Positions 926 through 32,120 of a stretch of 64,000 nucleotides of DNA are shown one piece after another. A program made the translations under genes and the position numbers. Below the pieces are notes generated by a model. It was not told the origin of the DNA, searched no databases, and worked only from the letters and a program-made list of their open reading frames with translations. The stretch is taken from positions 855,262 through 919,261 of the forward strand of contig NW_018407519.1 in assembly GCF_002113885.1 (NCBI RefSeq). Direction: 5' to 3'. Every line of letters starts with the position of its first letter. Position 1 is the first letter of the stretch. Source of the stretch: Mizuhopecten yessoensis. Lineage: Eukaryota.

Positions 926-1066
926 TGTCTCATTATACCCATCATAATATTATTCTAAGTCAAGAACATACAAAAAGATGTATACGGTATAAGCATGAAC
1001 TTGATTGAAGGACATTGTGACTTTCGGAACAACTTTGGTCTTAAACAATGTAAATTTCTGTTTCAG

Positions 1067-9840: not shown

Positions 9841-11837
9841 TCATGAACCCTGTTGATAAACATTGTGATGAGAAACTGGCATCCTTTTTTGCATTTCAGT
9901 TGGATGTGCCACGAGGTTAGGGGTAGCACTAGTGGAATAGGGCATAGTTTGTATGGGTACCATGGTTGGTGTGTGTGTGGTCTCCATCTGTATAACCCCT
10001 CCCTGGGTGTTGGTCGGCAGGTTCTCTAGGAACCTCAGGGTCTCCATGTAGCCAAGAAGTGTGGAGAAGGTCTGTGCAGAGGGTGTCTGTCTTGCATCCG
10101 ATGTCTGTAGGACAGTGGGCCGAGTTCCTTGTTCGCGGACTGGCTGGTACTGGACCTGGTCTAGCACCCCATTGGTGCGTACCAGCTCCATGTTAGCATC
10201 TTTGTTGGCGATCATATGGTGCTGTTGGGGTTGTGCCAGGTACATAGTTGTACCCTGGTGTTGCATTGTTCGGTAGTCATTGCCCCCAATCACTCCTGCA
10301 TCCATTGTCTGGTTCACGTTGACATGTCGGATTCCTTGATTACCCACTTCCACAGTATATCTCTCAACCTGCATTTGATTGGCTGGTGCTATGTGCAAAG
10401 TCTGCTGCATCTGAGCTGGCTGTTGTTGCTGCTGTTGGGTCATTGTTGCCATAGTGATAACTGGTTGGGCATTAATATTTTCATACAGGTGTATGGGTAG
10501 AGGTACATCTCTGTTCTCTGTTGGTATTGCATGTATAGGGTATGGGTTATTAAGTGAAGGTTGTGAGGTGACAAGCACAGCTGGCTCCTCCCTCATAGTT
10601 GGCATGGCAACAGCTTGCTCTATCCTCTCGTAGTGTTTGACTTGTCGCTCCTTCTTCTCCCCCCGGGGGGCACGTGGCGGCTTGGCATTAGGGTTATCTC
10701 CAGAGTGAGATGACCGCAAGTGACGTGTGAGATGATCTTTACGACCAAACCGCTGTGGACAGTGTTGACACAAAAAATCTTTTTTCTTTGTATGTGTTAT
10801 CATATGTCTACGTACATCCTTTTTGGTGTAAAACTTTTTACAGCAGTCTATACACTCGTGTGTTTTTTCTAAGCAGTTTTTTACAGACCGTGCACCACTG
10901 TGCACTTTGAGATGATAGAGCAGTTCCTCGCGTGTTTCGTGTTCCTTGTGACAAATGCCACACTCGGTTGTCCTCCCAGACTCGGCATCATGGAAGGCTT
11001 TATGTGTCCTATAGGAGAAATTATACGAATATTCCTTACCACATTCCTCACAAACCCAGCGTTTCTTGTTTGGGTCATGCGTTATGAGATGGTTCTTTAG
11101 ATGGTCCTTGCGGTTAAAGGACTTGTCACAGTAAGGACACTTATGGTGACGTGGACAGGTGTGTATCAGACGATGCCGCTCAAGTTTGAACTTTGACATG
11201 AAACCCTTTTTACAGTCTTCATCCTCACAAATAAATGGCTTAATGCCTGTGTGTTCAGCAACATGTATCACATAAATTGCTTCCTTGGTGAATTTCTCGG
11301 CACAATAAGGGCATGTCATAGGTTCCCTTCTTGGACCCCTCGGAGATTTTGGCTTTGGAATTTTCAAAAGTTTTCGTTTACGACCCCTCCTTTTAGGTAT
11401 GATAGGCTCCTCATCATCATCATCGTCATCATCATCGTCGTCATCATCATCAACTCCAAGGATGTCATTTAGAAGTTGATCTGTGGTTGGTTCCTCTAGA
11501 TCCTCTGTTTCATTAAATTGGATAGGTTCTTCCAACTCAGGTGAGGCAGGCTTCTCAACAACCATCACTGCTGGCTTGATCTTCGGCGGCCGACCTCTCT
11601 TTCTTGGAACATTAGGTACCATCGGATCCTGAACTCTTGCTTTCGACAAACGAGCCTTGTCAAGTCGTGCTCTCCAAGTTTTGGACGGTTTAACATATTT
11701 TCTTGGTCTTCCTTTTCTTGGCCTTCCTCGCAGTCTTTTACCGCCAGGAGGCACCCCTGGGCACATGTGTGCTTCTAATTCAGCAAATGTGCTAAACCCT
11801 TCAAAGCACACTGAACACACCCATTTGGCTGGGAATT
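9841..11837 (-). CDS. PLAG1: PR-PLAG last exon: C2HC finger, AT-hooks, poly-Asp, seven PLAG C2H2 fingers, Q/M/T-rich putative activation domain
   Basis: ORF 9841..11859; true acceptor tttctttggcag|AA at 11838-11839; the finger array matches recalled PLAG1 fingers 1-7. Confidence 0.95.
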
Positions 11838-14800
11838 CTGCCAAAGAAAAAGATTTCATGAATAAAATGAAATATTAATTGCATCAAAAATAATTTCAGC
11901 ATCTCAATCTATAGATAACATCTATGTTAGGGGAGTTCCATTTCACTAGCCTGACCCCAACAGCTAACAGATTTTATAAGCAAGAGCTTGTGTTAAGTTT
12001 CAATGTTTGCCATGAACATATAAGTAGGGCTAGCTAGTACAAAGCTTTAAGATCTGCCTGTGGGCTAGTAATAATTTTACACCCCTATACCAGAGTTTGT
12101 GGAAAGATTTATGTAACACAACCAATAGGTGTTTCTATGCGACGTTCCGATGATAAGGCCAAAAAAAATTGACAACTTGGTTCTCAGGCCCGCACACATT
12201 TCATGGCACCGTGCGCATTGCCGATTTTATCGTGAAAGTAATAAAAAAAAATGTGAATGCGCCAGCCGCCATCTTTAAAACAAGAGGCCCGGAGGGCCTG
12301 TATCACTCACCTGGATACCTAAGCAATCATGGCAAACTAATCTCCAAATGAGATCAAGGGAATATGCCAGACCCCAAGGCCAATCCTTGTAGCATAGTTA
12401 TATTAGATTTTTCATGACCAGCAATTTTATGAATGGTTATGGGGTGGGGATCTCAACTGTTTCCAAGCTTCGACTCAGAAACTAGGGCCCTAGAGTTGTG
12501 GCCAGACCCCAGGATCGATTCTAATATCGTGACTGCATTTGTCTCTTTTTGCCAAGCATTTGTATATATAGTTCTGGGTTGGGGATCTCAACCGTTTCAA
12601 AGTTATGACCCAGGGGCCAAGTCTGCAAGGGTGGGGCAGACCCTGGGATCAATTCTAATATCATGACTGCATTCGTCTCTTTATGCCCAACAATTGTACA
12701 ATTTTGAATCCCTGCCTCCCATGAATACTTCCGACCAAATGTGATCAATATCCATGGCATAGTTCTGCAGAAGAAGTCATTTATAGCAAAATAACCAAGT
12801 TGCCCCCTTTTGGCCCCGCCCCTTAGCCCCCTGGGGAGTCAGCCTCACCATTTGTACAATTTTTAATCACCACTACCTAGGGATGCTTCCAATCAAATAT
12901 GGTTGATATCCATTTCTTGGTTCCAGAGAAGAAGTCACTTAAAGCAGTATAGCCAAGTACCCTTTTTGGCCCTGCCCCTCAGCCCCCTGGGGGGTCAGCC
13001 ACACCATTTGTACAATTTTAAATCCCTGCCTCCCAGGAATGCTTTTGATCAAATATGATTGATATCCAGTGCACAGTTCTACAGAAGTTTGAAGCAGTAT
13101 AGCCAAATTGCCCCTTTTTGGCCCCGCCCCTCAGCCCCCTGGGGAGTCAGCCCCACCATTTGTACAATTTTTAATCACCACCACCTAGGGATGCTTCCAG
13201 TCAAATATGGTTGATATCCACTTCTTAGTTCCAGAGAAGAAGTCGCTTAAAGTAATATGGGCAAATTGACCCCTTTTGGCTCCGCCCCTCAGCCCCACTA
13301 TTTGTACAATTTTGAATCCCCACCACCTAGGGATGCTTCCAGTCAAATTTAGTTTAATTCCAACCAGTGGTTAAGAAGAAGAAGTCGTTTAAAGAAATTG
13401 TTGACGCACGGACGCCAAAAGCTCCTTCGGACCAGGTGAGCTAAAAATCCGGAAAATTGGTCCGTATGTTGTTTTTACTCGTTAGTCACCCAAGTCCCGA
13501 AAACGTTTGAATAAAGATAAGGATTGAGATACAGGCAAGTGTTAAAATGATTATGACTTATTAGTCTTGTGTACAAATGATGCTCATTTCGGTACAAATA
13601 CGGAATGGGGGGTTCGTGATTCTCGTCTGGAACATTGTGGGGGGATTTTTTCGGAGGCTTGCTCTATGACGGGTCTCTACTCAACTATAAAAAGACAAGG
13701 TAATGCCCACAATGAACGTTTTCCAAACTACACAATAAAAAAAAAATTGCCCTCGTCTTGTTTTTGCCATGTAAAATGAAAAAAAAATATACCGCCCTGC
13801 CGCATCTATTTTGAAAACAATTGGCCTGAGAACCAAGTAATTAATTTTATTTGGCCTTAGTACGGCATGTACTCTGTCACCTTCATCAGACAAATGACCA
13901 GTGAAGCGCATGTACACAAAGGTGTTAAATATGTACAAGTTGTCCATGCAAATCGATGTTGATTCGGCTACGTTGTAAGTGTATAAACAATTTGTTGCTA
14001 TATATGTACTGAAATGACTCAATTTTCGGCTACGTTTTGTTTAATATTTGGTCATAGATGTGCGAGAGTCTATGGTCATTTGTCTGATGAAGGTGACAGA
14101 GTACATACCATACCAGTCATCGAAACGTCACAAAGAAACACTTATTGGTTGTGTTACATGAAACGCTTCACAATCCATAATTACCAACCTGAGGAAAATG
14201 TTTAGAATTAGGTGATCTATATTTTTTCTAATAGTTCTGTGCTACTTTATTGAAAAAAAAAGGTTAAATACACATGACACTTTGGGTTCTGACACAAGAA
14301 GAAGCACATTTATAACACTGTAACATACTGTACATACCTGCTCCCTCGGGAGACTCGTCATCAGGAAGCATATCTTTGCCCATCTTCTCTGCATAATCTG
14401 CGGAGTACCACACTTTCAGCTCCGTGTTAGATGGAATTGGCTGTAAACATCACAAAAGCATTTATATTAAAGACCATTTTTTTTCTATTTTCTCTATTGT
14501 GAAAGTTTGGGTTTTTAACCCTTTCACCACCGTAGACCATAATGGACTCATTCAGATCAATGCATGGTAAAGTCTACTAAAGTTACCTAGGGTTGAAAGG
14601 GTTAAAAAGAGCATCTAGTGATTTACAAAATACTAAATATTAAGGTATTGGTAGTAAAAATATTTTTTACGTAACAAACCAAATATAAATTTATAAAATC
14701 ATTGACAGCAATCTGCAAGAAATAACTTTGCTGTCAAAAGACAAACTTGTATGATTAGGTTTCACCTAAAGTGAGATCAGTAGTACTGTAGTCAACTAGT

Positions 14801-17800
14801 TATGTTGAGTAGGGCAGAATAAATTGAAATTAATTAAACTTCTTGAATAATTTGAGAAATTCAAGCCTGATTCATGACAAATCCAGGTCCCTTGTAATTA
14901 TGTGGGACCTAACTGTACAATGCAATTAAACTGGACTCTCTATAAAAAATCTACAAAATCTAATAATGTATTATGTATTATGGGTTTTAGCTTTACAGAC
15001 AACTACACAGAAAAACAAACATGTTGATAAACACACGACTAGTTGAACTAGTTAATTGAAACTTCATCGATGTTTGGTGCAATTTTAATTTTCAATGTGA
15101 GTGCTCCAGATGATGTATGATGTAGTTTGACGATACATTTTTCTATACTTAAAGCACCATTTTCAGAAAAATAAAACACTTTTTCCTATCATGATATGAA
15201 CATGTTTATCATAATACATTCTTTCTACATAGCAATATAATATATCACGCTACGTACACACTAGATATATCATAACCCCGCTAACAGATACATTATACCA
15301 AGAACTAAAACATCATATACCTTTGTAGAAACATAAAATATGTAGTCCTGGAACTGGTAAGCCACTAGGTTTTGTTCAGAAGCTGTTTTCGCTGGCCGGA
15401 TAAACATCATCCAGTTGCACTTATCCTCGTCAGTAAAGTCAAGGGTATCCACATAACCATCTTCCCTAAACACCTGATCAAAATTTCAAAAAGTTGAACA
15501 ATTAAACACATAATTTCTACTTAGACATGAACAGAACTTTAATAACATCAATAGTACCCATCAAGTTTTAATATCAATCAATATAAGTGGGGATTTTCCC
15601 CACAATGAATATGCGAAAATAAATAATGATTTTCAAGTCACAGTATTCTGTACATATAATACTATATCTCGTGTGTACCTTTTTATTATGTAACAATATA
15701 ATATTGAAGTAAGGGCAATTCATTTTAAAAGGTGGATCCTAAGCATATCATCAGTAATATTAAATGGTTAGAAACATAAAACCTTTGAAGTGATTTGTTT
15801 TTTTAGATTTTGCTGTTTCAATTTGATAAGGAAATGGTGTCTGACAACATGAACCCTTTTTTTCGTTGTTTTAAAATCAAAGTACTGAGCAGACTCTGAG
15901 TTGATAAATTTTTATCTATAAGAAACCTTAAGTCATAAATTTATCTTCGTATGGTTGTACAGGATAAAAGTTGGAATTGATGATAACAGTATAAAATACG
16001 CTATAAAAATATAAACCATAATCATTACATATGTACATTCTGTAATTACTGAATATACAGAGAATTACTGTACAATACCTTGAGTTCATACTCTTGTTCA
16101 GCTGCAGTGTTGACTATGATTGGAGGCACCTCAGCAGTATCTGCCTGTTTGCCTGTGGAGTCCTGTGTTTTTGTCTGGTCTCCTTCAGTCTGGGATGCCT
16201 GTAACTCCTTGGTATTGTCCCCGTCAGGACCTACCTCTGCCGGCTGTTGTTGCAGCATCATATCATCAGGTTGTAGCACCATCTCACCCGACTGTTGTGA
16301 TATTAGCTGTGTGGACTGGTGTTGTGGTAGTAACTCATCAGCTGGATTCTGTTGTAATAATTCACCCGACTGGTGTTGCAACAGTTCACTAGCTTGGTGT
16401 GGCATCAACTCACTTGACTGTTGTTGGATCAAGCCTGGTATAGAGTTTGTGTTTGTCCTGTGAGGTCCTGACAAAACCTCCCCTGTTGCAGGGTTCACCA
16501 GAAGGCTGTCACCCGTTGCTGTCACGGTTAAGCCCTCTGTCAACTGGTTCTGTGTGGGCCCCAGGGTTAAGCTATCATTGACAAGCATCTGTGTTGATAC
16601 CAGACCATGTAGGGTATTTACAGGCACAACCACCACTCGCCCCTCACTGTCTACAGTAACGCGGGTCTCAAATGACTGGTTTGGTATCTGAGTCAGCTGC
16701 TGCTCAGCTGACTGACTTAGACCTGCATTGGAAGATAGACCGTCAGTCACTGGCAAACCTGCCTCGATCGATGTTTGCAGGTTCAACTCTGATCCATACT
16801 GTGTTTGATTGGCCAACATATCGCCACCACTATTAAATGATGGGAGGGCATTGGCAACATCTGTGAGTGAGTTGGCTGTGGACAGATAACACTGCAGACT
16901 TTGTGTGACCTCTGCATCAGAGAAGGATCCTGCCTGTAGTGTCTGGGAGCTAGACACACCTACCTGTACAATCTGCTGATTGCTCTGATTGTCAGATACT
17001 ATCCCCTCAAAAAGGTCTCCGTCCACCAGCACCTTGTGACCTACAACAGTGCCAGTATCAAAGTTTTGTTGAGACTCTAGCGGAGTCATTTCTGCAGGTA
17101 AGCTTATAGGGGTTTCTACCTTTTGTTCCAAACTGGCTCTAGATAGCTCAGTCACTACTTCTTCATTGCTTGTTATTTCCTTCTCCTTTGATTTTTTTTC
17201 TTCTTGTTCAGTTTTCTCCTTTTTTGGTTTGGCTTTCTCAGTCGATACAACTTTTGCCATGAAAGGCCCAAACTGTGACTTTACTTGAACAATCCTTTTG
17301 GCTAACACACCATATCCTGTAAAGGTATCATATGTCAAAATTTTTTAAGTATTGATTTAACAGAGATTGTTATACAAGTTTCCCAAACTGGGCAAAAATA
17401 TATAAACCATATATCAGCATTAGCGTAACATTGCTTTTATCATTTACATGTATATGGGATAGAAATATCTCACCTTAAGGTACCTTTTTTGAACCCAAAT
17501 TATGTACCCAAAAGTGAAATGATTTCTATGCTACATAACTTGCATATTATAAAGTAGTTTACTCTTAAATCACTTACCATTGTATTTTATTGATATGTGT
17601 CAACTAATTAAATATTGAACTGATTTTCAAATTATCTAAGTTCTAACTCATTGGAAAGAGTGCAACAGTTTGGTTTTACCGTTTATAATGAAAGTATGAA
17701 GTCTGAATTATACATAACATGTAATAAATGTGGTAGACATATTTAAAAGAAAATAATATTAAGAAAAATGACCTCATCTCATTGTCTTTGAATTATGAAT

Positions 17801-19535
17801 ATATGATATCATGCCCCATGATAGAACTTTCCTACTTGGCTTTCCATTTCTGGAAATGTCTTATATCACATTGCATATTTACAACTAATGAACTATGTAA
17901 GAAAAATGTCACTTGAATCTCACATTGTCAATAATGCTTTTCAAAAAGCAAAATAACAAATAAACTTGTATCACAATATAACATTATCTTTTTGTATGTC
18001 TATATAGATCTGAAAGTTGTAAGCCATCTACGGTGTTAGTGCACACATGAATTTTGAATAACTTGTCAGATCATGAGCATCAACTATCATCATACTTACT
18101 TAGTTTTCCATCCTGTGTTTTGACTGGCTTAATGACAAGCCCTTGAGGAAGCGTCAGTCTGGCTCGGGAGGGAATGACATTGTCATACACTTGGTGGAAA
18201 CCACCATGCTTCCTGCACATCCCAGGTACACTCTTACTGCATTCAGAGCACCCTGTGTGTAACATTGAAAAAATAATGTTTAAATATAATTGGTACATTG
18301 TACTATCTAGATTTATAAATTATTGAATTTAAACATTATTGGCATCAACCATAGAATTAATGTATGTTTAGAAATTAAAGAAGCAATACTTCAATCAAAT
18401 TTAATGTCCTTCTTGTGAATTAACAAGCATTATGTTTAAAATCAAAGAGGAACAGTTCAATTGTGTTTTTACACTCTAAAGGATTAGGGGAGTTGAGGGT
18501 CATTTCTGGCCTCATCAGGGATTTAGAATTAGTTGTTATATTCGTTATCTGGAATAAATGAAGTACGCAAATATGAAATTTAAAATTCATTCAACAACTG
18601 GTTTAGGAGCTCGAGATATGGCATTACAAAGAGAGACATAAACCCGCATTTTCGCAAAAAAAATGTCTCTTGTGCGCTATTTTGTTGGAAATTGGCCATT
18701 TTGAAGGAAATAAACTAAACATTCTTTAATTTTTGAAAGCCTCTGCATCCAACAAACTAAATATTTGACATTCTTACCCATTGTCATACTATGTCAATGT
18801 CCATTTGTAGAAAAGATTTTTTGTTCGTCACATGCAGAGGCTTATTTGGCTATTTCTGCATAGCAATGCAATTTTGTTGCTAGGATAGGGATATACGCAT
18901 GCCCATTGGAAGCAAATCTTCACCAAGAAAGCACTTATTATTCAATATGATGTTTATAACGGAACTTGGTAAATAAATTTTATTTGTATTTGTTTTCTTC
19001 TTGTTATTATGAGCCAAAAATGACCCAAGTCCTTTCAGGGAACATATATGTTATTTGACTGCTAAATAGCAAGGGACAACTGAAATTCCTTGTTAAATTG
19101 ATACATACGTACACTTGCACTTTAGATTGGTGTTACAAGTCACTGTAGGCAATGACATTGATATGGACATATTTACCAATACACTTGTAGTTAGTATAAA
19201 TAAAATGTAGCAGTGCGAGACAATTGAATTACATTAGTAACATGTCAGTCCATATGAAATTGATTCAGCCTAATTAATAACCCTTTACAGAACTGAAAAG
19301 TAATTACGGTTGGTTTTTTACCTTCTCTTAGTTTGACCAAAGTTGTTCATGGTTTTTTTCAGGTTTATTTTAACTGAGTTAAATAGAACTTTACTGAACA
19401 TGTCTTATTAGATCTGGCATGTTTATATAATTACCAGAGCATTATATCATTGTTAATATATGCCACGAAAACAGACTGGAGACCAGAGAACTCTGTGATT
19501 CAATACTTACAAAAGTCATCTTTTTTCGATGACAT
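9841..19535 (-). CDS. PLAG1: PR/SET-domain PLAG-family zinc-finger transcription factor, 1222 aa; complement(join(9841..11837,14338..14440,15321..15473,16079..17316,18100..18252,19511..19535))
   Basis: All five introns are GT-AG with compatible phases (1,1,0,0,1), giving a 3669-nt CDS. N-terminal zinc knuckle and PR domain resemble PRDM10/15. Seven C2H2 fingers carry PLAG signatures ([48 protein letters not shown]). The symbol indicates the family: a likely co-orthologue of PLAG1/PLAGL1/PLAGL2. Confidence 0.88.
12156..13857. mobile_element. Non-autonomous TIR DNA transposon (~35-bp TIR, TA target duplication) nested in the outer MITE
   Basis: TA|AGGCCAAAAAAAATTGACAACTTGGTTCTCAGGCC ... GGCCTGAGAACCAAGTAATTAATTTTATTTGGCCT|TA. 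Confidence 0.8.
12277..13447 (-). mobile_element. HINE/pearl (Helentron-associated) non-autonomous element with internal ~155-bp tandem repeats
   Basis: Minus-strand start TTTTTAGCTCACCTGG; CTCACCTG/CAGGTGAG subterminal IR; terminal AGGCCC...GGGCCT palindrome plus CTTGTTTT; ~4.5 internal repeats at 12690-13390; inserted in an A/T run. Confidence 0.75.
14338..14440 (-). CDS. PLAG1: PR-PLAG coding exon 5: C-terminal end of the PR/SET domain
   Basis: tttacag|PIPSNTELKVWYSADYAEKMGKDMLPDDESPEGA|gtatgt; ELxVWY is the PR-domain C-terminal motif; absent from the ORF track. Confidence 0.92.
14519..14601. mobile_element. 83-bp piggyBac-type MITE
   Basis: TTAA|CCCTTTCA ... TGAAAGGG|TTAA: CCC/GGG termini and TTAA target duplication. 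Confidence 0.7.
15321..15473 (-). CDS. PLAG1: PR-PLAG coding exon 4: core of the PR/SET domain
   Basis: VFREDGYVDTLDFTDEDKCNWMMFIRPAKTASEQNLVAYQFQDYIFYVSTK; NWMxF..EQNL motifs; flanked by AG and GT. Confidence 0.95.
16079..17316 (-). CDS. PLAG1: PR-PLAG coding exon 3: PR N-terminal strands (GVLAKR..QFGPF), ~390-aa low-complexity insert, then YELK
   Basis: ORF 16046..17338; acceptor ctttacag|GA, donor AAG|gtattg; 1238 nt of open frame. Confidence 0.85.
18100..18252 (-). CDS. PLAG1: PR-PLAG coding exon 2: PRDM zinc knuckle and pre-PR region
   Basis: (W)CSECSKSVPGMCRKHGGFHQVYDNVIPSRARLTLPQGLVIK resembles recalled PRDM15 WCEDC..ECPELG..VKDSFVLSRARSSLP; acacacag| acceptor and |gtaagt donor. Confidence 0.92.
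18489..19032. mobile_element. Old degenerate TIR MITE
   Basis: GGAGTTGAGGGTCATTTCTGGCCTCAT vs reverse complement of ATGAGCCAAAAATGACCCAAGTCC. Confidence 0.45.
19511..19535 (-). CDS. PLAG1: PR-PLAG first coding exon (MSSKKDDF+T); exon spans 19511-19560
   Basis: Acceptor tatatttcag at 19561, ATG at 19535, donor gtaagt. T+GG across the intron gives the conserved knuckle Trp. Confidence 0.8.
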
Positions 19536-21333
19536 ATTGAAGACTTCCAGGATGGAAAAGCTGAAATATAAAATTGAAGAAATTCTTTGAAATGAAACTA
19601 TAATATGTATACAAATTATGAAAAAGGGAGGGGGGACTGGGACACAGTTTCTCTAATTAATTGCCCCCCTTCCTCATCTCCCCTTCCTTTAAAAACAATC
19701 TTGGACAAAATCCGAAAACATCAATATTAATCAATTTATTGTGGTATTTCCAGTATAATTCCTGGGCTAGATAGATGAGATGTCCATAATTTCAAACCAA
19801 CCAACCTCGCAGAGTTGGTAGGAAGCGGCTAGTATTTTACCAGGGCGACATGCATCCAGAACATCAGAAACTTCTCAATATCTTGGAAGCATGTGTACAA
19901 ATGTACTTGAATAACAGTTCCATTGTCAACAGATTATTAGGTATTTTAAGGTTTATTAGGAAACTAATTTGACTATAGATCTATATAGCTATAAGTGGGC
20001 TTTATTGGAGCAATCTATAAATCTTCAGACATAATCAATGATTCTTATGGACTCCTACATCTACTTCCAGCAGTCCCTCAGTGCAACCTGTCAGTTGAGC
20101 TAAATACAGGTGAAGTAGACATTTCTGGCTTCAATTTGAATACAATAGTTTACAATGGACTGTGTTCAAACTGGACACCTCTGGGACTACAATATACAAG
20201 AATATCCAGTTTGCAGAGATAGAGTTTCATATTGTGGAGTCTAGCTGACTCAAGGATCTATAAAAATGAACAAAAGAAGCAGAACAAATGATCTGGAAAA
20301 CAAGTCAGAAATGGAGTTTGATTAAGAGAGTACATTCACCCACTTTTTATTTGTAAGATTTTTAATGTGAACATGATATCATAAGGTTGTGGACCAAGGT
20401 GTTTTCTATAATGATGCTAATTACACTATCACAATAAGTATAAAACAACTTCATTTTTACTTTTCATTAATTATATATAAAGTTACTACAAATATTCATC
20501 ATCAGCACATGCACGCACAGTATCCAGAGACAGTAATCGCTTCCTCCTTTGAGATTCGTCACTTAATACAGAAAGAAGACGAAGATCATAAAACAAAAAC
20601 ACACCTTTTGTGACCTAACAAAAAGTAACACGATAGATATAAATCCAATTTTCATGTGATCAGTGATATAATCACTTCCTTTTCTCAGAAAATACAAAGG
20701 AGTCTTGTTAAGAGTGTCAATACAATAGCAATGCTACAGTATATATCCTGTATAAACTATGAGGCTTCACCAACAGCTTGGACTGGACTGCAATAAACAG
20801 CACTGTCCCAGATTTTGGAACGTTTGTGTACGGTTATCCAGATTTCTTGATATTTGAAAATTTCATGCAGGATTGATTGAAATTAATTGGACATTTCAAT
20901 TGGTAGAAAAACGACATTTGAGAATCAGAATGACCGACTTGGTTACAATACAGAATGCATACTGTAGCCGTGTTTCGCGTTAGATCAAGGCTCTCAATTT
21001 TATATGGCAAATTGATTTGTCATCGCAGAAATTTTTTAATCGACAACACGTATTATACCCATCACATACTATGTTTTGTGGTAGTGTTTGGCCCCATTTA
21101 AATCTCAGATCAATCCTTTATGCAATACACACATATTCGTAACCACACACTACAGTTAGTTTTGGAAATGAATCCACTCTCGCGGCGCATAGTGCTCTTG
21201 AGGCACCAGGGAGGGGTCAGGGCCCACACCAGGAAAATGACATCCTGTAAATTAATGTAACAGCCAAATAACAGTTAATGCAAGCATAAGGCATCCATTA
21301 TCAAACAAGCAGAATCCATTAACGAAATCTTAC

Positions 21334-21451
21334 CGTCCTTATTTGTGTATTTGATAAAAATCTTCAAAAATTAGGACAAAGAATAATTTAGTCCCGTTGG
21401 TAGCCATTACCGCAATGCATGATGGTATCGGACGTTCGTGACGTAGCTGTC
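21334..21451. promoter_or_regulatory. Compact bidirectional promoter/5' region shared by PR-PLAG (non-coding exon 1, donor ACG|GTAAGA at 21334) and CHCHD7 (ATG 21452)
   Basis: Divergent genes; locally CpG-rich; Staf/ZNF143-like site at 21410-21428 and CRE-like TGACGT at 21439-21444. Confidence 0.65.
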
Positions 21452-24400
21452 ATGGCCGCTTCCATAGAATCCTCAAGTTCGAGCCAAAAGGAAAATAAAT
21501 CAAAAGAGAAAAGGGGTAATGCACCACTAAATCCCGACTACACCCTCAAATCGGCATGTTTAGAAGTAAGTTATTTACTATAAATATCTTTTTAATATCA
21601 CTGAATATTCCAAGAATTATTGTGTTTGCAGTAACACTGCAGCCTCATTGAGTCATTCTAATTATAACTCAACTTTCGTTTTTGATCAAGGGTAAATGTA
21701 CATGAAAGTTATTATTAGCAAAAGCTTATCAATCGAGTCACTGTGAAAGCTGCATATTTCTGGAAACGCTTCAAGAAACGTTATATCCACTCCAAATAAT
21801 ATGAAATATGTGCGACCTAATGAAAATACTGTTTTCTACATAATTTACTTTTTACGTAACACTGTCAGTAAAGTCTATCTATCTAGCTATATGTTATATA
21901 CTCCACAGAGACCAAAATGGTTTTGAAGTGGAGGTAAAATGGTAAACATCTGGTCAGTGCATTAATGCTGATATGACGTTTACCACATCCGATTCAATTT
22001 GTGTAGTTTTTTGTTCGAGGGGGTTGGGTTTGGTTGCAGAGCTCTATTAATTCCATATCCTACCACCTACCCCATTCTAAGGCTGTCATTCGCACCATGT
22101 TCCCCTATTTAAAGCTTCCTGCATTAGTTGATATGGAAACTTTGTTTAAATGTAACAAAAAACAATCCAACTCAAGTCCTGTAAAACACTTATTTTACTA
22201 GCAAATAATATTGAATCCTGGGGCAAGAAACAAAAGCTGGTAGCACTAGGTAACTTGTGCGTAACCTCAAAAAAATGAACGTGATAAACTGTTATATGTT
22301 AGCACAAAGGCATTGTATGCTAGAGTTGTGACCAATGGTTGCATACACACTCCCAAGGGGTACGCAGTCAAACATACAGCTACAATGTAAAACCAAATGT
22401 CAGCATACCAGGTGGTTAGTTTGCATTATCCTTAATGCAACCAGCCAAATTACAGTGAAGTACCCTTTGACCTCCATGGATTGAAAATATTAGCATTCAA
22501 TTTTCCATGACACCAACCAAATATCAAGCACCAACATACGCAGTGATGGTCTAATACCAATAGGTCACAAACCATAACATTCATCAACCCCTGTGAGAGG
22601 TAACAGAAAGATTTAAAAAAAAAAAGAGATAAAAACAAGCCCCATAGAATCTTCAACATCAACTCTCAATCTTTAAAAAACAAGCAATATACATCTACTT
22701 AATTTAAAAGACAAAATAAGACACAATTATTGGGACACAGTCAAAGACTCTGAAGTGTCTGCTCAGACAACTTCAAAGTATACAGAAATGATAGTCAAAA
22801 AATACTAAATTATAAAAGAGGAGGAGTCTCTGTGGCCATTGCGATCGTTATATCAGTGATGAGGTTCATGTTATCTCCTTATGGTAACACCACAGAAATT
22901 GTGTGGACAAAACTTAATACTGTTGGTAAGAAATCATTGTATATTGCATCATTCTACAACCCAGAGACATAACAGTTTATGAGGTCTTGAAACCTCCCTC
23001 AGAAAAGCAGTTGGTCTAAACAATGCAGTAATCATAGTCAGTGGTGACTTCAACAAGGTCTGTCAACCAAACACAGACCATCCCCAGGTCCACTATGATT
23101 TTGCTGACCTACTAGATAAAACTGGCCGACCACAAATAATAGAACAACCAACTAGAAATGGAAACACTTTGGACCTTACCATCACAAACCTACCAAATCA
23201 ATTTTCACATTCTGAAGTCATGCCAGGTGTATTTGACCATGGCATAGAGTTTTGTGAATTCATTACTTATTATGGTTTATATTCGCAAATGATACTTTGG
23301 ATATAACATGTTGATAACATGTTTGGAATTATAACCCTGAGTTGACAGTTTGATACTTTGAACATTTTGAGTCAGCCCTACCTCTAAGGGCTGTAGGGCG
23401 GGGCCCAAAGGAGTCAGTGTGCTAAGAATTTTGTTTTGTTTAGAATCAGAGGTGCTAGTTTCAAATACTTTTCAGTCTTAAATCTGTATGCTAGATATTG
23501 AATAAGGTGGTTTTATTGTTTTTTTTATGACTTTGAATAATATTTCTGTTCATGTTTAAAAAAAAAATCTTTGTATAAATATATCAGAACTCAGGTGACC
23601 GCTAATACATGGGCCTCTTGTTTTCCTAAATAAACATCTGTGTTAAGTTTGCAAGAGTTAGAATATACTGATATACCACTCTCAATATCTCATAATAAAT
23701 GGATTTCTTAAAAAAGATATTATGTTTTCAACAAGAGAAACACACAAATTATTCTTACTGATTATATTGGATAATTGTCAATTGTATGCAACTGATCAGC
23801 AACAATAAAAAATGGAACTGATTCAAATCACAGGTTAAAAATCTAAATTTTATAATTATCGTGAACATAATCTGCTAAAATGATTCAAAATATAAAATCA
23901 AGGATGATGTGTCGTATTTGAAAGAAAGTATAGTATAGTATGTCAATAAGGGGAAAGTCTGCCCTGGCACCAGTTCACAAAAATAAACACATTCAGAGGA
24001 GACAACTTCCCCTTTGTATATGATACATGTGATATGTTTTCTTGTCAATTAGAAGTCGTCTCCCCTTGCTCACTTACACATGTATTCAGGAAGCTAATAT
24101 AATGTATCATTCTAACAAGCTATTTCTAGTTAATTCTTGAGCTAAATGTAACTTAATATATGTTAATTGTTTTGGTAAATATGATTAATGTAATTTGCAT
24201 GTAAAAAAATGGATGTATGTTAATTTATTTAATAAATATAATTACCTGGTAATGTAATTTATATGTAACATAATGGATGTATGTTAATTTATTTAATAAA
24301 TATGATTAATGTAATTTACATGTAACATCATGGATGTATGTTAATTTATTTAATAAATATAATTAATGTAATTTGCATGTAACATTATGGATGTATGTTT

Positions 24401-27400
24401 ATTTATTTGATAAATGTAATTAATGTAATTTGCATGTAACATAATGGATGTATGTTAATTTATTTAATAAATATAATTAATGTAATTTGCATGTAACATC
24501 ATGGATGTTTATGTGCTTGGTTGGATCGTCATGTCATCATGACAGCAAGTCATACTCCATTTAGCATATTCCGTCTTTGCGTATTGCAGAGTTATCTTCT
24601 CTTGGGAGCTGGTATTCATTGTTACGTCACTTGTTTGTGAGAGTAACGTCATCAATTTTTGAGAAAACGACGTATTTTTCTCACACAAACCAATGACGTA
24701 ACAATTAATACCTGCTCCCAAGAGAAAATAACTCTGCAATACGCAAAGACGGAATAAGTACATTTGGTTAATTTTTGGTTTGTTAAGATTATTATTTCAT
24801 AGACATGAACTTTCATGTTTTAGGTATTTCTCTTATAAAACTTGAATTCCATTAACTAGCTTTAGTTGTTTTTTTTTCTTTGTCACTTTTAGTCAACTGA
24901 GACAGACTAGAACTAGTGATGGTGTTTTTATGGAAAGTTTGTGATATTTACATTAATCACAAGGTACTGTATATAGGCCAAATATATAAACCTTGTTATA
25001 TTGCTATCATTTGTTCAGCAAAATTTTGGCATTATGAAGGGGTTGGGCAATTCGTTGAACTAGACATATAGAGGAATTGTGTTTAGAAAAATATCAGGAG
25101 GTTTTGTAACATGTTATAGGTCTAGGTGGAAAACGGCAACTGAAACAAGGTACATTTAGTAGCATTGCATACTTCATATATATACAAGAGGGGCATTGTG
25201 TGAAAGGTTTTCCTGTATATGGACGAAGGGCATTTGTACATCAAAGATTACTATATTCAAATGATAGGCACCCAAAAGATAGAGGTTTTGCTAAAATTAT
25301 GAATTAAGGGTCAATATAAGAAGGTTTTACAGTATATATATGTATGAGGGGCATTATACCATATTAAGGTTTTACTGTAAGCAAAGTTTAAATAGGTTCT
25401 TATTGTAGTTGTAATTGTTGCAGAACTACTCTTGCTATGATTTATACAAACATTGATATTGAAGTTGAAACAAATTAAAGGCTGCCATATTTGTTACTTT
25501 CCTTCATCAGAACCAGACGATTCACTGTGTAAGAGTTTGTCTGATGAACCCAGCTATAGTCTAGTGTGTTGAGTTAAAAGCTACTGGTGTGCTCTCCTGG
25601 GTTATAAATCCAGAAAATTAGGCAAAGCTTGTTAATGGTAACCTTATAAACACCTTTGCCAGTTTTAACCTCACTGTTCTGACAAAGTGAGTTAAAATCC
25701 TTCTGCACTGATATGTACAACACATTCAAATAATTTAATCACATATTTCTTGTTTTTATTTTGTAGGAGGGTAAGATCAGTTTGGATTGCATAAGACGTC
25801 ATAATTTCAAAGATAATTCCCAGTGTGAGAGTGAGTTTCAAAACTACAGAAATTGTAAAGCATTTTGGGTAAGTTTTATTAATCTAGCCTGATCATCTGT
25901 TCCCCCTTAGACAGGACATTTTAGGGGCTTACATATAATACAAGACAAATGTCTGTTCTTTATACCCTTGTGATCCAAAACTGATCCCAAAATTGATATA
26001 TTCAATGCTTTAAGTTTAACTCCACACATGCTGACCTCCTGTGCTAGCCTATAGCTACACACACAGAATATTAGCTTCAGATTAGCTAGGTATTTTTATC
26101 TATTGTGTCATTGACATTTGACGGTCTGTAATTGGTTCTAGACAAGAAACAACTTCTCTTAATATTTATTGAATTCATCCAGACATGCTTGTATACTATA
26201 TATAATTACTCAGGTTAAATAAAGAGATGGGAACCTGCCTGTATGTTATTTGGTTACCAATTCTTACTCAGTATTGACAGGCTACTTCATTCTGGACGAT
26301 AACCTTTCTAAATAGCAATGGACTTTGATATAGTCTGGTATACATTTGTGTAATTCAAATGTAGTTTTGTCAAAATTAGGCCATTTTGAAATATGCTCCC
26401 TACTTTACCCCACATATCTCTCAACTAACCTTAATTATTATTTCCAGAGATTATCTTAGAATCCAAAAGAGGAATCTTTTGAAAATGACGTGTTGATACA
26501 CTTTGATATTTAGATATTGACTAACGGTTTAAAAACTTTCCACGGTCAAGGTCACTGTTACAAAAAATAGACCATAGGGGATCAGATGGTCCTTATCTTA
26601 GAATCCAAAAGCCTAATGTTTTTGAAATATTGAATGTTGATTCAAATGGTGACACACTGTGATATTTAGTGGTGCAATATGAGTTTAAAATGTTTCCAAG
26701 GTCAAGGGCACTGTTACTAAAAATAGATCCCTGATATTTGAATCCAATAGACCCATCTTTTTAAAACATTCCATGGATATTATCATATATAAACACTGTA
26801 ATAATTAGGTGTGCAATAGGGGTTTAAAAATTCTAAGGTCGAGATCAAGGTCACTGTTACTAAAAATAGACCTTTGGGGATACAGTCCTTATTGCAGAAT
26901 CTGAAAGACTAATTTGACAAGGTGATACACTGTGCTTATGTAGATGTGCAAAGGGTTTTTTAAACGTTTTAAAGGTCATTGGTCAAATTCAAGTTAACTC
27001 TCACTTAATGTCAAATCATGATGGCATGACCCAAAGGTATATTAATGCAATATTAGTAAAATTGATTGGGGATAGCTACCGAAAGGCCAAATTTGGAACA
27101 CATCCTTCGCTTAAAATGCTGTTATTTGTACTAAAGGAGTAAGTGGGCCCCAAACCCTCTGCCCCCATGTTGGCTGCACCATATGTTTATTAAACATTGA
27201 GCCTCCTTAGCCCAACAAACCTGCAAAAGCAGATTAAATTAGATTCAGATCCCTTAATCCATACTACTGACTGAGTAGGATTACCGTAAGAATCTTTCTT
27301 ACCATTGAGCCTCCTGTTGGCCCAACATGTCCCAGGCCAAATTTAATCAAATACCACTCAGCTGTTCTGGACAAGTAGTGTTTTAAAGTAAAAAAAATAC

Positions 27401-27882
27401 ATAGACACTGCACCATTAATGTCTATTTCATTATTCAGAGCACAGGAGGTCAAAGGTTATAATACAGCACCTACAGTTACGATATAAACTGTATACATGT
27501 CCACTGCCATCAAAGTGGATGGTGTGCTGTATCCTGACTATTTACATAATATTACCACTAAATTGATAAATCTCTGATCTGCTGTGAACTGAGGTGGCTG
27601 TTTTTAGGGGCCTTGTGCCTCTTGTTTTTCAAAGTGTGAGAGCTGGAGCTAGAATTTGTTAAACTAAAATCACTACAAAGTGCTAAAGAATGTGACACAT
27701 AATATCTAGTTGATTATGTTTTTGTACAACCTGTGTGTTTATTCTATTTTCAGACTAAGGTTCAATGGCGTCGGTTTTGGAAAGGAGATAGGCCTACGTT
27801 ACCCCTTCCAGAAGATCGCGAGCAGGCTAGAAAAGACTATGCAGATATCATGGAGAAAGTGATGGCTAAAAGTCAAAAATAA
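21452..27882 (+). CDS. CHCHD7: CHCHD7/COX23-like twin-CX9C mitochondrial intermembrane-space protein, 114 aa; join(21452..21565,25767..25868,27754..27882)
   Basis: MAASIESSSSSQKENKSKEKRGNAPLNPDYTLKSACLE|EGKISLDCIRRHNFKDNSQCESEFQNYRNCKAFW|TKVQWRRFWKGDRPTLPLPEDREQARKDYADIMEKVMAKSQK*. Exact CX9C-CX9C spacing; Y.NC..FW...RR..G..P.P...ER pattern of CHCHD7; both introns GT-AG, phase 0. Confidence 0.92.
22700..23270 (+). mobile_element. Decayed non-LTR retrotransposon fragment (APE endonuclease region) in CHCHD7 intron 1
   Basis: Frameshifted RGGVSVAI, EIVWTKL..LYIASFYNP, IIVSGDFN, IIEQPTRNGNTLDLTITN, GVFDH motifs. Confidence 0.85.
24176..24508. repeat. ~57-bp AT-rich tandem minisatellite (~6 copies)
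   Basis: Unit TAATGTAATTTGCATGTAACATAATGGATGTATGTTAATTTATTTAATAAATATAAT. Confidence 0.9.
24567..24756. mobile_element. 190-bp near-perfect foldback (palindromic MITE)
   Basis: Arms TATTCCGTCTTTGCGTATTGCAGAGTTATCTTCTCTTGGGAGCTGGTATTCATTGTTACGTCA and its reverse complement, 3 mismatches over 63 bp. Confidence 0.85.
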
Positions 27883-29500: not shown

Positions 29501-31890
29501 CATTTATTAAATATGAAATAAAACAAAGTAACACAAACTAGCTATTCACACCAGAAAGTAATTCATTTAAGATGGAATTTATCACAAGAAAATGGTTACT
29601 AACACAAGAATTAATTCTAGTAATCGACACAGAAATAATTAACATAAAATCAATAGTAGTTCGCACAAAATATTAATACAAGGTAGTGAAGGGTCATATG
29701 TCGACAGATGGTTAGACCACATAAAGTGCTATAGTCTCACTACCAGCCATAACCTGGACACGGTAGGAGCCATAACCAGTGTGCCTATTTTCTTTTTCAC
29801 CAATGAACCATTGGACAAGTAATTATATAATTGGATGGTCAAGCTGATATGGACTTTAATATATACACTGATAATCTCAGAGAGGAGCAACAGGGCAACC
29901 TGATGTGCAAAGCTAGGGTGCATCAATATACACAGCAAGATAGAAATGAGCTATCCAGACAATATCAGGATTGCCATCCTCTAGCCCAGTGTTAGAGATC
30001 TAAGTCCAATGGGTTTCCTATGAGACTTTTGATGGCGTCGCAGCATAACATTATTTCTGGTGTTGAGATTATATTTACCTATGCATCAAGCAAATCCTGG
30101 CTTTCTCTGAATACTCTTAATACCTGGGTTGTTGATCTTTTCAATTCAATGTACTGATTTAAAGGAAATATATATAAAAAAAACCCAACATATTTTCAGA
30201 AAAAAATAGATTATTAATCACACCAACACATGACATCAGAAATACAACACATCATTATCACAGGTCTTTCTCGTGACAATTCCTCTCTTGACTGGAATCG
30301 GTACCATTCACATTTTCTGTTTTTCTGTCAATATTGCTCCATGGCATGGGATGTTCCACGACCTGTCAAAAAATAATATTTTATTTCAAAAGCCTGGTTA
30401 CCTTCGGAGAAATATTTGTTTCTTATAGTTCCTATTGAAGTGACTTCAAAAAAGGCAACGCGCAATCATTGCTTTGTCGAAAATGAGAAATTTATGGAGG
30501 ATGTGATTCTGCTCAGAAATATGATTATAACAATTTCAAAGCCCTGCCTTAACCCAATCCAAATTCCTCTTCATATTTGTAAATATCTGGACAGAAAATA
30601 ATACACCATGCCCATACATAATTTCTACACAACAAGGCAACGTTTGTAAGTACCGGGTAGATTAAATCATACACAAAAACACCGAGGTGTGCGACAGCCT
30701 CGGTGAGGTAACCCAACATTGTCACGACATAGTCCTGGATAGTCAGTAAACAACTTCCTTCACTCAATCTGGATGGAATCATCGAGGCTGATATAAGGAA
30801 GTATGTTTTTGAGCGATATTTCAAAATAGGCTACAGATCGCGCCAGGAAATAATTAGTTTCCACCATCGGGTCCGCAATATTTACCATAGTAAATGTTGA
30901 CTTAAATATTACTTTGTAATACATAGCCGCATTTCTCTAACGTGAAGTTTGAAAACAAAAAGAATGTATTAAGTAAAATAATTATATTGCCGTTTGACAA
31001 AAGGGATTGGACATAATGACTTAATGGATAAACTTTAGTTGTCATCTATGTCCATAATAACATCTGTTAAAACTTTGACTTCCCAACACTGCATACTAAC
31101 CATGCCTCGTGCTATAATACCAAAAGCACGTCACACTATATATGTACACTTAGATAACGAGATGACAATTGAATCGGACAAGTCAACCCGGATACGTATG
31201 GTCTAGCACCTGGTCCTTGTGTAAGACATTTACCAACGTGGGAAAAAAACTTCGAAATAAACGTTTCAGAGTTTCAAATATCGGTCATTTTTGTTTCAAC
31301 TTGGCAAACGCAGATACCTCGTTTTATTGTTAACACAAGGGACTTGATTGTTAAACATACGCTTCCAGCAAGAGAGAAAAAAAGATGGTGATTGTTCGCA
31401 TGATACATGTTTCGGTCGACAAAGTTCTGCTAATTGTTTCAACAGACTGTCAGTATTTGAATCTTGAGGTTTCATAGGAACCACTTTTAGCCAAAATGCA
31501 TGAGGAAATTTAATTTATATCAAGGTCACTATCCTTTGATACACAATAAGGTATTTTGTTTTTCATTATGCCCATTGGTGTTTCATTTGGTTCCGTTATC
31601 ACTACCCCGGTTATCTTTATGAGAACCTGGCATTACTTTGGGTTTGACGAAGTTCGACATGTCGTGTGATGTCGATAATTACAAGATACTGATTACCCTT
31701 TCGGAACACTTCGTGTTATATTTTCCGTGTAAGCCATGGGTATGTGTGTGTACATATTTTTCTGTTCCTAATGTTGGCCTACTAGATTAATGCATGTTGA
31801 GTCTGAATCGCTGTTTTGTTTCCGGTGTTCTCCTGCTTTCTTACCAAGAAGATAGAAATTACTTGCGTAAACTTTATTTTCAAGAAATTG

Positions 31891-32120
31891 AATTAAAGAT
31901 ACTACTATTCAAGAGAGTATACAACAAAATATAATTAAAGATACTACTATTCAAGAGAGTATACAACAAAATATAATTAAAGATACTACTATTCAAGAGA
32001 GTATACAACAAAATATAATTAAAGATACTACTATTCAAGAGAGTATACAACAAAATATAATTAAAGATACTACTATTCAAGAGAGTATACAACAAAATAT
32101 AATTAAAGATACTACTATTC
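31891..32120. repeat. Perfect 42-bp tandem repeat (~5.5 copies)
   Basis: Unit TTAAAGATACTACTATTCAAGAGAGTATACAACAAAATATAA. Confidence 0.95.

What the first reader, a model, noticed from the sequence alone, without database searches (positions are those of the whole stretch)
19511..27882. PLAG-CHCHD7 head-to-head pair conserved in a probable mollusc
Seen in sequence: a three-exon twin-CX9C CHCHD7 gene, invisible to the ORF track, starts at 21452 divergently from the PR-PLAG gene, whose probable non-coding first exon ends at 21334, only 118 bp away. Established knowledge: human PLAG1 and CHCHD7 are head-to-head at 8q12 sharing a bidirectional promoter, which is involved in CHCHD7-PLAG1 promoter swapping in pleomorphic adenoma and in the cattle stature QTL. 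Inference: the pairing predates the protostome-deuterostome split. It independently supports PLAG orthology of the PR-containing gene and suggests ancient co-regulation of a growth TF with a cytochrome c oxidase assembly factor.
Basis: partly seen in the sequence, partly recalled or inferred. Interest (0 to 1): 0.82.

Follow-up and report, generated by a model that had tools for sequence, protein, structure and literature searches.

The report
Scallop PLAG–CHCHD7 head-to-head gene pair
In a scallop genome, the growth-factor gene PLAG and the small mitochondrial gene CHCHD7 start back-to-back within about 100 bases, as they do in humans and cattle, and the same pairing in oyster, amphioxus and acorn worm shows that the arrangement is older than the split between molluscs and vertebrates.

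Summary
The + strand carries a three-exon, 114-codon twin-CX9C gene (21452-21565, 25767-25868, 27754-27882). RNA reads confirm its first splice. RNA reads also show that the minus-strand PLAG-family gene has a non-coding first exon ending exactly at 21334. That exon is spliced to 19560-19511 (ATG at 19535) and then to 18252. The two transcripts therefore start at most about 65 bp apart.

The small gene is CHCHD7. Its exons are identical to the public Mizuhopecten yessoensis CHCHD7 protein. A family profile hits human CHCHD7 (PDB 2LQT) at E 3.6e-27, against 3.5e-4 for the next CHCH family. The zinc-finger gene is the only PLAG-family gene in this genome.

The same divergent pair, with CDS starts 2-3.6 kb apart and nothing called between them, occurs in Crassostrea virginica, Branchiostoma lanceolatum and Ptychodera flava. 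Two more bivalves probably share it. It is absent in three arthropods. It was not seen within 10 kb in a sea cucumber, a crinoid and a sea slug.

Inheritance from the bilaterian ancestor is well supported, but the protostome evidence comes from bivalves only. Functional co-regulation is not shown: splice-read ratios differ between samples. Both genes already carry these names in the public annotation. The cross-phylum pairing was not found in the searched literature. The scan's own earlier notes cover only the PLAG gene on this same window.

The parts
21449..21565 (+). CHCHD7 exon 1 (CDS from ATG 21452; 38 codons; holds the first Cys of the twin CX9C). The 5' UTR seen in RNA is only about 3 nt.
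   Evidence: Translation. The RNA contig of X7 ends at 21449, and 6 molecules of X22 begin at 21455. 120 reads run on from 21565/21566 into exon 2. 100% identical to P0273.
25767..25868 (+). CHCHD7 exon 2 (34 codons; the other three Cys of the twin CX9C)
   Evidence: Pfam CHCH at 26.2 bits. Exon borders are the same in oyster, amphioxus and Ptychodera. The loose-end consensus at 21566 equals its first 30 letters.
27754..27882 (+). CHCHD7 exon 3, coding part with the stop codon (42 codons; holds the family's conserved ...P.LP..ER motif)
   Evidence: tblastn of P0273 and P0127. Family alignment A2.
21385..21448 (.). Core of the shared divergent promoter. This is the largest possible gap between the two transcript starts. 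It contains TGACGTAG at 21439-21446.
   Evidence: Bounded by the 51-nt minimum extent of PLAG exon 1 and by the CHCHD7 contig end at 21449. Sequence. Local CpG o/e is 1.13 against 0.58 for the whole window.
21334..21384 (-). PLAG-family gene, non-coding exon 1 (minimum extent; its 5' end was not mapped)
   Evidence: Joint 21334->19560 with GT..AG on the minus strand, 16 reads, longest shorter side 51 nt.
19511..19560 (-). PLAG-family gene exon 2, with the start codon at 19535-19533
   Evidence: Joints on both sides. Sequence.
18101..18252 (-). PLAG-family gene exon 3 (N-terminal part before the PR/SET region; lower end approximate)
   Evidence: Joint 19511->18252. P0008 residues 10-59 align at 100%.
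16073..17341 (-). PLAG-family gene, large exon with part of the PR domain and a long low-complexity stretch (limits taken from the alignment)
   Evidence: P0008 residues 52-474 align at 98%. Weak PRDM2_PR hit, E 0.011. Homologs carry PF21549.
14306..15476 (-). Two short PLAG-family coding exons (15321-15476 and 14306-14443) and the intron between them
   Evidence: tblastn of P0008. tblastx hits to the oyster, amphioxus and Ptychodera genes.
9841..11859 (-). PLAG-family gene, last coding exon with the C2H2 zinc-finger array
   Evidence: ORF. Pfam zf-C2H2. PLAG1/PLAGL2 relatives at E about 1e-60. Only strong match in the genome.

Best explanation
The window, from Mizuhopecten yessoensis or a near-identical genome, holds the scallop orthologs of CHCHD7 and of the PLAG zinc-finger family. 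CHCHD7 is the animal counterpart of yeast Cox23, a twin-CX9C protein of the mitochondrial intermembrane space (established knowledge). The PLAG gene here is in its ancestral form, which carries a PR domain. The two genes are arranged head-to-head and transcribed outward from one compact promoter of at most about 65 bp between the transcript starts. The arrangement is inherited from the last common ancestor of protostomes and deuterostomes. It has been kept in bivalves, amphioxus, hemichordates and vertebrates (beside PLAG1), and broken in arthropods. Shown here: the gene models, the splices, the position of both 5' exons, orthology, single-copy status, and the pairing in three other invertebrate genomes. 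Inferred: the pair persists mainly because a break between two start sites this close would damage one or both promoters. That reasoning does not require the two genes to be expressed together. CHCHD7 behaves as the more strongly and steadily expressed partner, and PLAG as the variable one.
For: Gene models and splices. CHCHD7 identity: exon 2 against 2LQT at E 0.039 as top hit. Pecten ortholog P0127 against 2LQT at E 9.8e-11, next family above 0.2. Profile A2 against 2LQT at E 3.6e-27 and 97.7 bits, against CHCHD1 at 23.9 bits. All named relatives are CHCHD7. P0273 is identical over all three exons. PLAG identity: (vertebrate PLAG1/PLAGL2 at 49-54% identity and E about 1e-60 over the finger region). 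In the genome, one match at 521 bits and the next at 90 bits. CHCHD7 is single-copy. Pairing elsewhere: C. virginica L001, B. lanceolatum L002 and P. flava L003 each have a divergent three-exon CHCHD7 gene 2.1-3.6 kb (CDS to CDS) from PR-PLAG, with no gene called between them. In Potamilus the two genes have consecutive locus tags (038784 and 038785) on one contig. In Saccostrea both lie on a contig of the same length. Vertebrates: 'head-to-head only 500 bp apart' (PMC9405559) and 'bidirectional promoter of PLAG1 and CHCHD7' (PMC5359603).
Against: All protostome positives are bivalves. The pair is absent in a spider, a locust and Tribolium. It was not seen within the 10-kb flank in Holothuria, Anneissia and Plakobranchus. 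That limit could miss a PLAG coding exon lying behind a long 5' intron. The PLAG start site is bounded, not mapped, because the libraries are unstranded. In the other species only CDS-to-CDS distances are known, not start sites. Junction-read ratios (37:1, 67:15, 16:0) argue against tight co-expression.
Confidence: 0.85

Rival explanations
1. The pair is kept because the two genes are truly co-regulated. In this view a shared element couples a growth-promoting transcription factor to a cytochrome c oxidase assembly factor, and selection acts on that coupling.
For: The promoter is extremely compact. The pair is retained across at least three phyla and vertebrates. Bovine promoter variants were first reported to affect both genes (citing Karim 2011). 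CRE-like TGACGT motifs lie in the scallop and oyster intergenic DNA.
Against: Read ratios between the two genes vary widely among three scallop samples. In cattle mammary tissue the lead variant affects PLAG1 strongly but not CHCHD7 (P = 0.065). Arthropods separated the genes and kept both. The motif match is short and was not tested against chance.
Confidence: 0.2
2. The adjacency arose independently in bivalves and in deuterostomes, so it says nothing about the bilaterian ancestor.
For: No non-bivalve protostome positive was found. Three arthropods and one gastropod were negative within the range examined.
Against: Bivalves, amphioxus and acorn worm share the same two single-copy families, the same divergent orientation, a similar 2-3.6 kb CDS spacing and the same three-exon CHCHD7 structure. 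With roughly 20,000 genes per genome, a chance repeat of one specific neighbour pair is of the order of 1 in 10,000 per lineage (inference).
Confidence: 0.04
3. The small gene is some other twin-CX9C protein (CHCHD1, CHCHD5, CMC, COX17/19 or an NDUF subunit), and the likeness to CHCHD7 is generic.
For: Pfam reports only the generic CHCH domain, below its cutoff, for exon 2 (26.2 against 27.2 bits). Exon 2 alone reaches only E 0.039 against 2LQT.
Against: The family profile separates CHCHD7 from every other solved CHCH protein by more than 70 bits. The match extends beyond the CHCH domain into the C-terminal motif encoded by exon 3.
Confidence: 0.02

Closest known systems
Human and bovine PLAG1-CHCHD7 bidirectional promoter (8q12; BTA14 stature QTL)
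   Same: The same two gene families in divergent orientation, with a shared promoter of a few hundred bp or less. PLAG has non-coding 5' exon(s), and CHCHD7 is a small gene of few exons.
   Different: The scallop gap is far smaller: at most about 65 bp between transcript starts, against about 500 bp. The scallop PLAG gene carries a PR/SET domain that mammalian PLAG1 lacks, and it is the only PLAG-family gene in its genome. The distance from the PLAG start codon to CHCHD7 is 1.9 kb here and, from my own knowledge, tens of kb in mammals. No growth association is known in scallops.
Ancient conserved microsynteny and head-to-head pairs in metazoans (the general phenomenon, from my own knowledge of the field)
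   Same: Unrelated neighbouring genes are kept together across phyla in slowly rearranging genomes (scallop, amphioxus, hemichordate) and lost in arthropods.
   Different: This particular pair did not turn up in the full-text searches for invertebrates. Supplementary lists of published microsynteny surveys were not searched.
Human CHCHD7 (PDB 2LQT) / yeast Cox23 family
   Same: Twin CX9C with the same spacing, an N-terminal ...NPC/SAC... lead-in, and a C-terminal ...KFW..V...R...G..P.LP..ER tail.
   Different: The scallop has a longer Ser/Lys-rich N-terminus (114 against 85 aa). Its first Cys is preceded by Ala, where nearly all relatives have Pro. Its function has not been tested.

Membership tests
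CHCHD7 / Cox23 family | Twin CX9C motif (two Cys-x9-Cys helices) | tested here: met
   C36-x9-C46 and C58-x9-C68 in the exon translations. All four Cys are invariant in A2.
CHCHD7 / Cox23 family | Closer to CHCHD7 than to any other CHCH-domain family | tested here: met
   Profile A2 against the PDB: CHCHD7 97.7 bits, next family (CHCHD1/mS37) 23.9 bits. P0127 gives 9.8e-11 against more than 0.2. All named relatives are CHCHD7.
CHCHD7 / Cox23 family | Family-specific C-terminal extension after the CHCH domain | tested here: met
   Exon 3 (WRRFWKGDRPTLPLPEDRE) aligns with the conserved R...G..P.LP..ER block.
CHCHD7 / Cox23 family | Location in the mitochondrial intermembrane space and a role in cytochrome c oxidase assembly | not testable with these tools
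   Needs localisation and loss-of-function experiments.
PLAG zinc-finger family | PLAG-type array of C2H2 fingers with PLAG1/PLAGL1/PLAGL2 as the nearest named vertebrate relatives | tested here: met
   Residues 170-400 of the last exon: vertebrate PLAG1/PLAGL2 at 49-54% identity, 88-94% coverage and E about 1e-60. The closest match is 'Zinc finger protein PLAG1 [Mizuhopecten yessoensis]' at 97%.
PLAG zinc-finger family | Unambiguous orthology (no competing paralog in the genome) | tested here: met
   Own-genome search: 521 bits at this locus, and the next match at 90 bits and 38% identity is a generic C2H2 gene.
Bidirectional (divergent) promoter pair | Opposite strands, with 5' ends facing each other less than 1 kb apart | tested here: met
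   PLAG exon 1 occupies at least 21334-21384 on the minus strand. CHCHD7 RNA runs from 21449 on the plus strand.
Bidirectional (divergent) promoter pair | Correlated expression of the two genes | tested here: inconclusive
   Only three samples. Junction reads CHCHD7:PLAG are 37:1, 67:15 and 16:0. This suggests loose coupling at best.
Bilaterian-ancestral microsynteny | The same pair and orientation in at least one protostome and one deuterostome phylum | tested here: met
   Mollusca: this window, C. virginica, and probably Potamilus and Saccostrea. Chordata: B. lanceolatum, plus vertebrates from the literature. Hemichordata: P. flava.
Bilaterian-ancestral microsynteny | Presence in several protostome phyla | tested here: not met
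   Absent beside PLAG or CHCHD7 in Schistocerca, Parasteatoda and Tribolium. Not seen within 10 kb in the gastropod Plakobranchus. Annelids and other spiralians could not be reached.

The most novel reading that the evidence does not exclude
The PLAG-CHCHD7 divergent promoter would be a regulatory unit more than 550 million years old, kept by selection because it links a growth-controlling transcription factor to mitochondrial respiratory-chain assembly. If so, variation in the roughly 100-bp scallop promoter could influence growth, as the bovine promoter variants do. The pair may even predate Bilateria, since cnidarians were not tested.
Probability: 0.15. Interest if true: 0.8.

Novelty: new member of a known kind. 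Interest (0 to 1): 0.5.

Why it matters
The PLAG1-CHCHD7 promoter is one of the best-known stature and body-size loci in livestock, and it is a site of promoter swapping in salivary-gland tumours. Showing that the two genes were already back-to-back in the bilaterian ancestor gives that locus a deep evolutionary frame. At that time PLAG still carried a PR/SET domain. The scallop also offers a very small, experimentally tractable version of the promoter, about 100 bp, in a farmed species. Finally, the finding supports calling the PR-bearing invertebrate gene the true PLAG pro-ortholog. On the other hand, conserved head-to-head pairs are a known phenomenon, both scallop genes already carry these names in the public annotation, and nothing here shows a functional link between them.

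Tried and rejected
1. The word search with a single exon could not reach full-length relatives because of its length window. I therefore searched the representatives library with an exon-2 profile built from four species, which gave 242 hits. I then worked from the full-length public proteins it returned.

All searches used single exons by reference or the public proteins P0273 and P0127.

3. The look-up of the Mizuhopecten PLAG1 record and of the Apostichopus PLAG protein returned nothing.

4. I looked for PLAG exons within 10 kb of CHCHD7 in spider, Holothuria, Plakobranchus and Anneissia, and for CHCHD7 beside the catshark PR-bearing PLAG paralog. There were no hits. Because of the 10-kb limit these results are uninformative rather than negative, except for the spider. 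There, a different divergent neighbour (DUF4604) sits 378 bp away.

5. I looked for a vertebrate-like extended neighbourhood. The oyster short-chain dehydrogenase gene 3' of PLAG has no counterpart in the window.

6. I compared the 120 bp upstream of the CHCHD7 ATG in four species. The only shared feature is a CRE-like TGACGT in scallop and oyster, and there is no alignable block. I considered a TISU-like start context (ATGGCCGC). The relatives start with Met-Asp, so it is not conserved, and I dropped it.

7. Rfam found nothing relevant in 17-29 kb.
Full report
**What is in the sequence**

On the + strand there are three short coding exons.
- Exon 1, 21452-21565: 38 codons, from MAAS... to ...KSACLE.
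- Exon 2, 25767-25868: 34 codons.
- Exon 3, 27754-27882: 42 codons and a stop.

The donors are GTAAGT and the acceptors are preceded by pyrimidine-rich tracts. Together the exons give 114 codons, with C36-x9-C46 and C58-x9-C68. The first CX9C spans the exon 1/2 junction. None of the exons reaches the ORF list at 70 aa or more.

On the minus strand lies a long zinc-finger gene. Its last exon is 9841-11859, with six C2H2 stretches by Pfam. Further exons lie at 14.3, 15.4, 16.0-17.3 and 18.1-18.25 kb.

**RNA evidence**

I laid three raw-read RNA-seq runs and one set of RNA contigs, all with the same species label, on 17950-23900.

*CHCHD7.* 37, 67 and 16 reads in the three runs, plus a 722-nt contig, leave the genome at 21565/21566. 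They continue with AGGGTAAGATCAGTTTGGATTGCATAAGAC, which is the beginning of exon 2. This proves the exon 1-2 splice. The contig's other end is at 21449, and six molecules of one run begin at 21455. The 5' UTR seen in RNA is therefore only a few bases long.

*PLAG gene.* A joint from 21334 to 19560, with GT..AG on the minus strand, is seen in 16 reads from 9 different starts. A joint from 19511 to 18252 is seen in 19 reads. No other joint into 19560 was reported within the laid stretch. The shorter side of the first joint reaches 51 nt, so exon 1 covers at least 21334-21384. Exon 2 (19560-19511) holds the first ATG, at 19535, so exon 1 is non-coding.

The quoted 118 bp is the distance from the PLAG exon-1 donor to the CHCHD7 ATG. 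The gap between the two transcript starts is at most about 65 bp (21385-21448). The libraries are unstranded, so I could not map the PLAG start more closely.

**What the small gene is**

Exons were searched by reference.

- Exon 2 alone gives Pfam CHCH at 26.2 bits, against a cutoff of 27.2 for the whole domain. Its top PDB hit is human CHCHD7 (2LQT), E 0.039, with the alignment ending at the same ...FW.
- A profile of exon 2 from scallop, oyster, amphioxus and Ptychodera (A1) found 242 proteins at E <= 0.001 in the representatives library.
- One of these, P0127, is 'CHCHD7-like [Pecten maximus]'. Searching with it returned P0273, 'CHCHD7 [Mizuhopecten yessoensis]'.
- P0273 is identical to the window over all three exons. 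It lies on a contig of 1,069,242 bp, the same length as the contig that carries the public 'Zinc finger protein PLAG1' of that species (P0008).
- The genome behind the window has 987.6 Mb in 82,659 contigs. The organism is therefore the Yesso scallop or something nearly identical.
- P0127 hits 2LQT at E 9.8e-11 over residues 27-97, while every other CHCH protein in the PDB scores above 0.2.
- A 32-sequence family alignment (A2) hits 2LQT at E 3.6e-27 (97.7 bits). The next family is CHCHD1/mS37 at 23.9 bits.
- Every relative that carries a name is called CHCHD7: oysters, freshwater mussel, sea slugs, spider, mite, tick, bees and a sawfly, nematode, sea cucumber, acorn worm, amphioxus and a fish.
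- The gene is single-copy in this genome.

The public 124-aa model starts at an ATG at 21422. That ATG lies outside the RNA contig, and the Pecten protein starts at the downstream Met. The 114-aa reading is therefore the better one, though this is not decisive.

**What the large gene is**

The finger region (residues 170-400 of the last exon) finds vertebrate PLAG1, PLAGL2 and PLAGL1 at 49-54% identity over about 90% of its length, E about 1e-60. It finds P0008 at 97%.

Many invertebrate relatives carry a PR/SET domain (PF21549, PF00856) in front of the fingers: bivalves, insects, sea cucumber, Ptychodera and amphioxus. So does a second shark gene called 'PLAG1-like'. The window's 430-aa exon gives a weak PRDM2_PR hit, E 0.011.

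In the scallop genome this locus scores 521 bits. The next match is 90 bits at 38% identity, which is a generic C2H2 gene. This is therefore the only PLAG-family gene, and so the pro-ortholog of the vertebrate family.

**The pairing in other animals**

Starting from PLAG relatives, I fetched their loci with 10-kb flanks.

| Species | Locus | Divergent neighbour | Gap from its end to the PLAG start codon |
|---|---|---|---|
| Crassostrea virginica | L001 | 118-aa gene | 2.2 kb |
| Branchiostoma lanceolatum | L002 | 109-aa gene | 3.6 kb |
| Ptychodera flava | L003 | 123-aa gene | 2.1 kb |

In each case nothing is called between the two genes. In the scallop the corresponding distance is 1.9 kb.

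tblastn shows that each neighbour contains the exon-2 homolog with the same borders (AG|GA... and ...TGG|GT), together with matching first and third exons. The amphioxus product is P0122, which NCBI names CHCHD7-like. The Ptychodera product is P0121.

In Potamilus streckersoni the two genes have consecutive locus tags (CHS0354_038784 and 038785) on one contig. In Saccostrea echinata both lie on a contig of 7,031,926 bp.

For vertebrates I rely on the literature. [quoted passage not shown] **Where the pairing is not seen**

- Schistocerca PR-PLAG has an IMPDH gene upstream.
- Tribolium PLAG1 lies between a dipeptidyl-peptidase gene and a Gaa1 gene.
- The divergent neighbour of the spider Parasteatoda CHCHD7 is a DUF4604 gene.
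- No PLAG exon lies within 10 kb upstream of CHCHD7 in Holothuria, Anneissia or Plakobranchus.
- No CHCHD7 exon lies within 10 kb upstream of the catshark PR-bearing paralog.

The last four results are limited by the 10-kb flank and by gene-model quality. The three arthropod results are real separations.

**Interpretation**

The same two single-copy families sit in the same orientation, at similar spacing, with the same CHCHD7 exon structure, in a mollusc class, a cephalochordate, a hemichordate and vertebrates. Inheritance from the bilaterian ancestor explains this best. Independent assembly of the same specific pair is very unlikely (inference).

The weak point is that the protostome evidence comes only from bivalves. 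I could not reach annelids, brachiopods, cephalopods or cnidarians with the tools and look-ups available.

**How it most likely works**

A single compact promoter region fires in both directions. It is relatively CpG-rich for this genome (o/e 1.13 against 0.58). With start sites this close, any rearrangement breakpoint between them would damage a promoter. That alone can preserve the pair in slowly rearranging genomes.

True co-regulation is not shown. CHCHD7 splice reads outnumber PLAG splice reads by 37:1, 67:15 and 16:0 in three samples, so the ratio varies widely. In cattle mammary tissue the lead variant affects PLAG1 but not CHCHD7. I put the co-regulation reading at about 0.2.

**Novelty**

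Both genes already carry these names in the public scallop annotation, and the pairing is well known in mammals. Full-text searches gave only livestock and tumour papers. None reported the pair outside vertebrates:
- CHCHD7 with microsynteny;
- CHCHD7 and PLAG1 with synteny;
- CHCHD7 with head-to-head;
- PLAG1 with PR domain and amphioxus;
- PLAG1 and PLAGL2 with invertebrate and ortholog.

Supplementary tables of microsynteny surveys were not searched. I class the finding as a new member of a known kind: a further, deep example of a conserved head-to-head pair.

**Earlier notes of this scan**

Two first-reader notes on the same window describe the PLAG gene with its PR/SET domain. They agree with what I found, and I only partly tested them. 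A follow-up report that overlaps this stretch exists but was withheld.

**Limits**

- The joined protein model was not searched.

Noticed in passing
window 1066-1182: This stretch is 90% identical at the protein level to the last exon of the oyster PX + protein-kinase (SGK3-like) gene that lies 3' of PR-PLAG in L001 (24362-24478). The neighbour on the tail side of PLAG is therefore also shared by scallop and oyster. In oyster a short-chain dehydrogenase gene lies in between, and it has no counterpart in the window.
   Followed up: partly
window 23436-23523, 19821-19851, 18613-18845: Short stretches inside introns attract very deep RNA reads and contigs (word depth up to about 6000 in one run), with loose ends on both sides and many variant letters. 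They look like copies of a highly expressed dispersed repeat, not exons of either gene. Rfam has no match there.
   Followed up: partly
window 24129-24756: CHCHD7 intron 1 holds a 57-nt tandem array (24129-24534, at least 6 overlapping copies). It is followed by an inverted repeat with 80-nt arms, 91% complementary (24567-24646 / 24677-24756), which is MITE-like. There is a weak sub-threshold Rfam hit to MIR4387 (41.5 bits against a gathering score of 84).
   Followed up: partly
window 59881-61917 (+): An intact 678-aa ORF with HTH_Tnp_4 and DDE_Tnp_4 domains and a weak SWIM finger. It is a Harbinger/PIF-type transposase, either possibly still active or domesticated.
   Followed up: no
window 21422-21451: The public 124-aa CHCHD7 model (P0273) starts at an ATG 30 nt upstream of the ATG at 21452. 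The RNA contig ends at 21449, and the Pecten maximus ortholog starts at the downstream Met. The public start codon is therefore probably outside the mRNA, and it falls within the shared promoter or PLAG exon 1.
   Followed up: partly
one search hit list (P0042, P0043, P0092, P0113; locus L008): Sharks have, besides the ordinary PLAG1 (about 500 aa), a second 'PLAG1-like' gene of 725-775 aa that keeps the PR/SET domain, as do amphioxus, Ptychodera and invertebrates. The PR domain therefore seems ancestral, lost in the PLAG1/PLAGL1/PLAGL2 lineages and retained in a paralog of cartilaginous fishes. No CHCHD7 exon lies within 10 kb upstream of the catshark copy.
   Followed up: partly
window 66-947 and 7228-7521, 31880-32122, 38565-39035: Long ORFs on both strands that are really translated tandem repeats (satellite-like arrays), not genes.
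   Followed up: no
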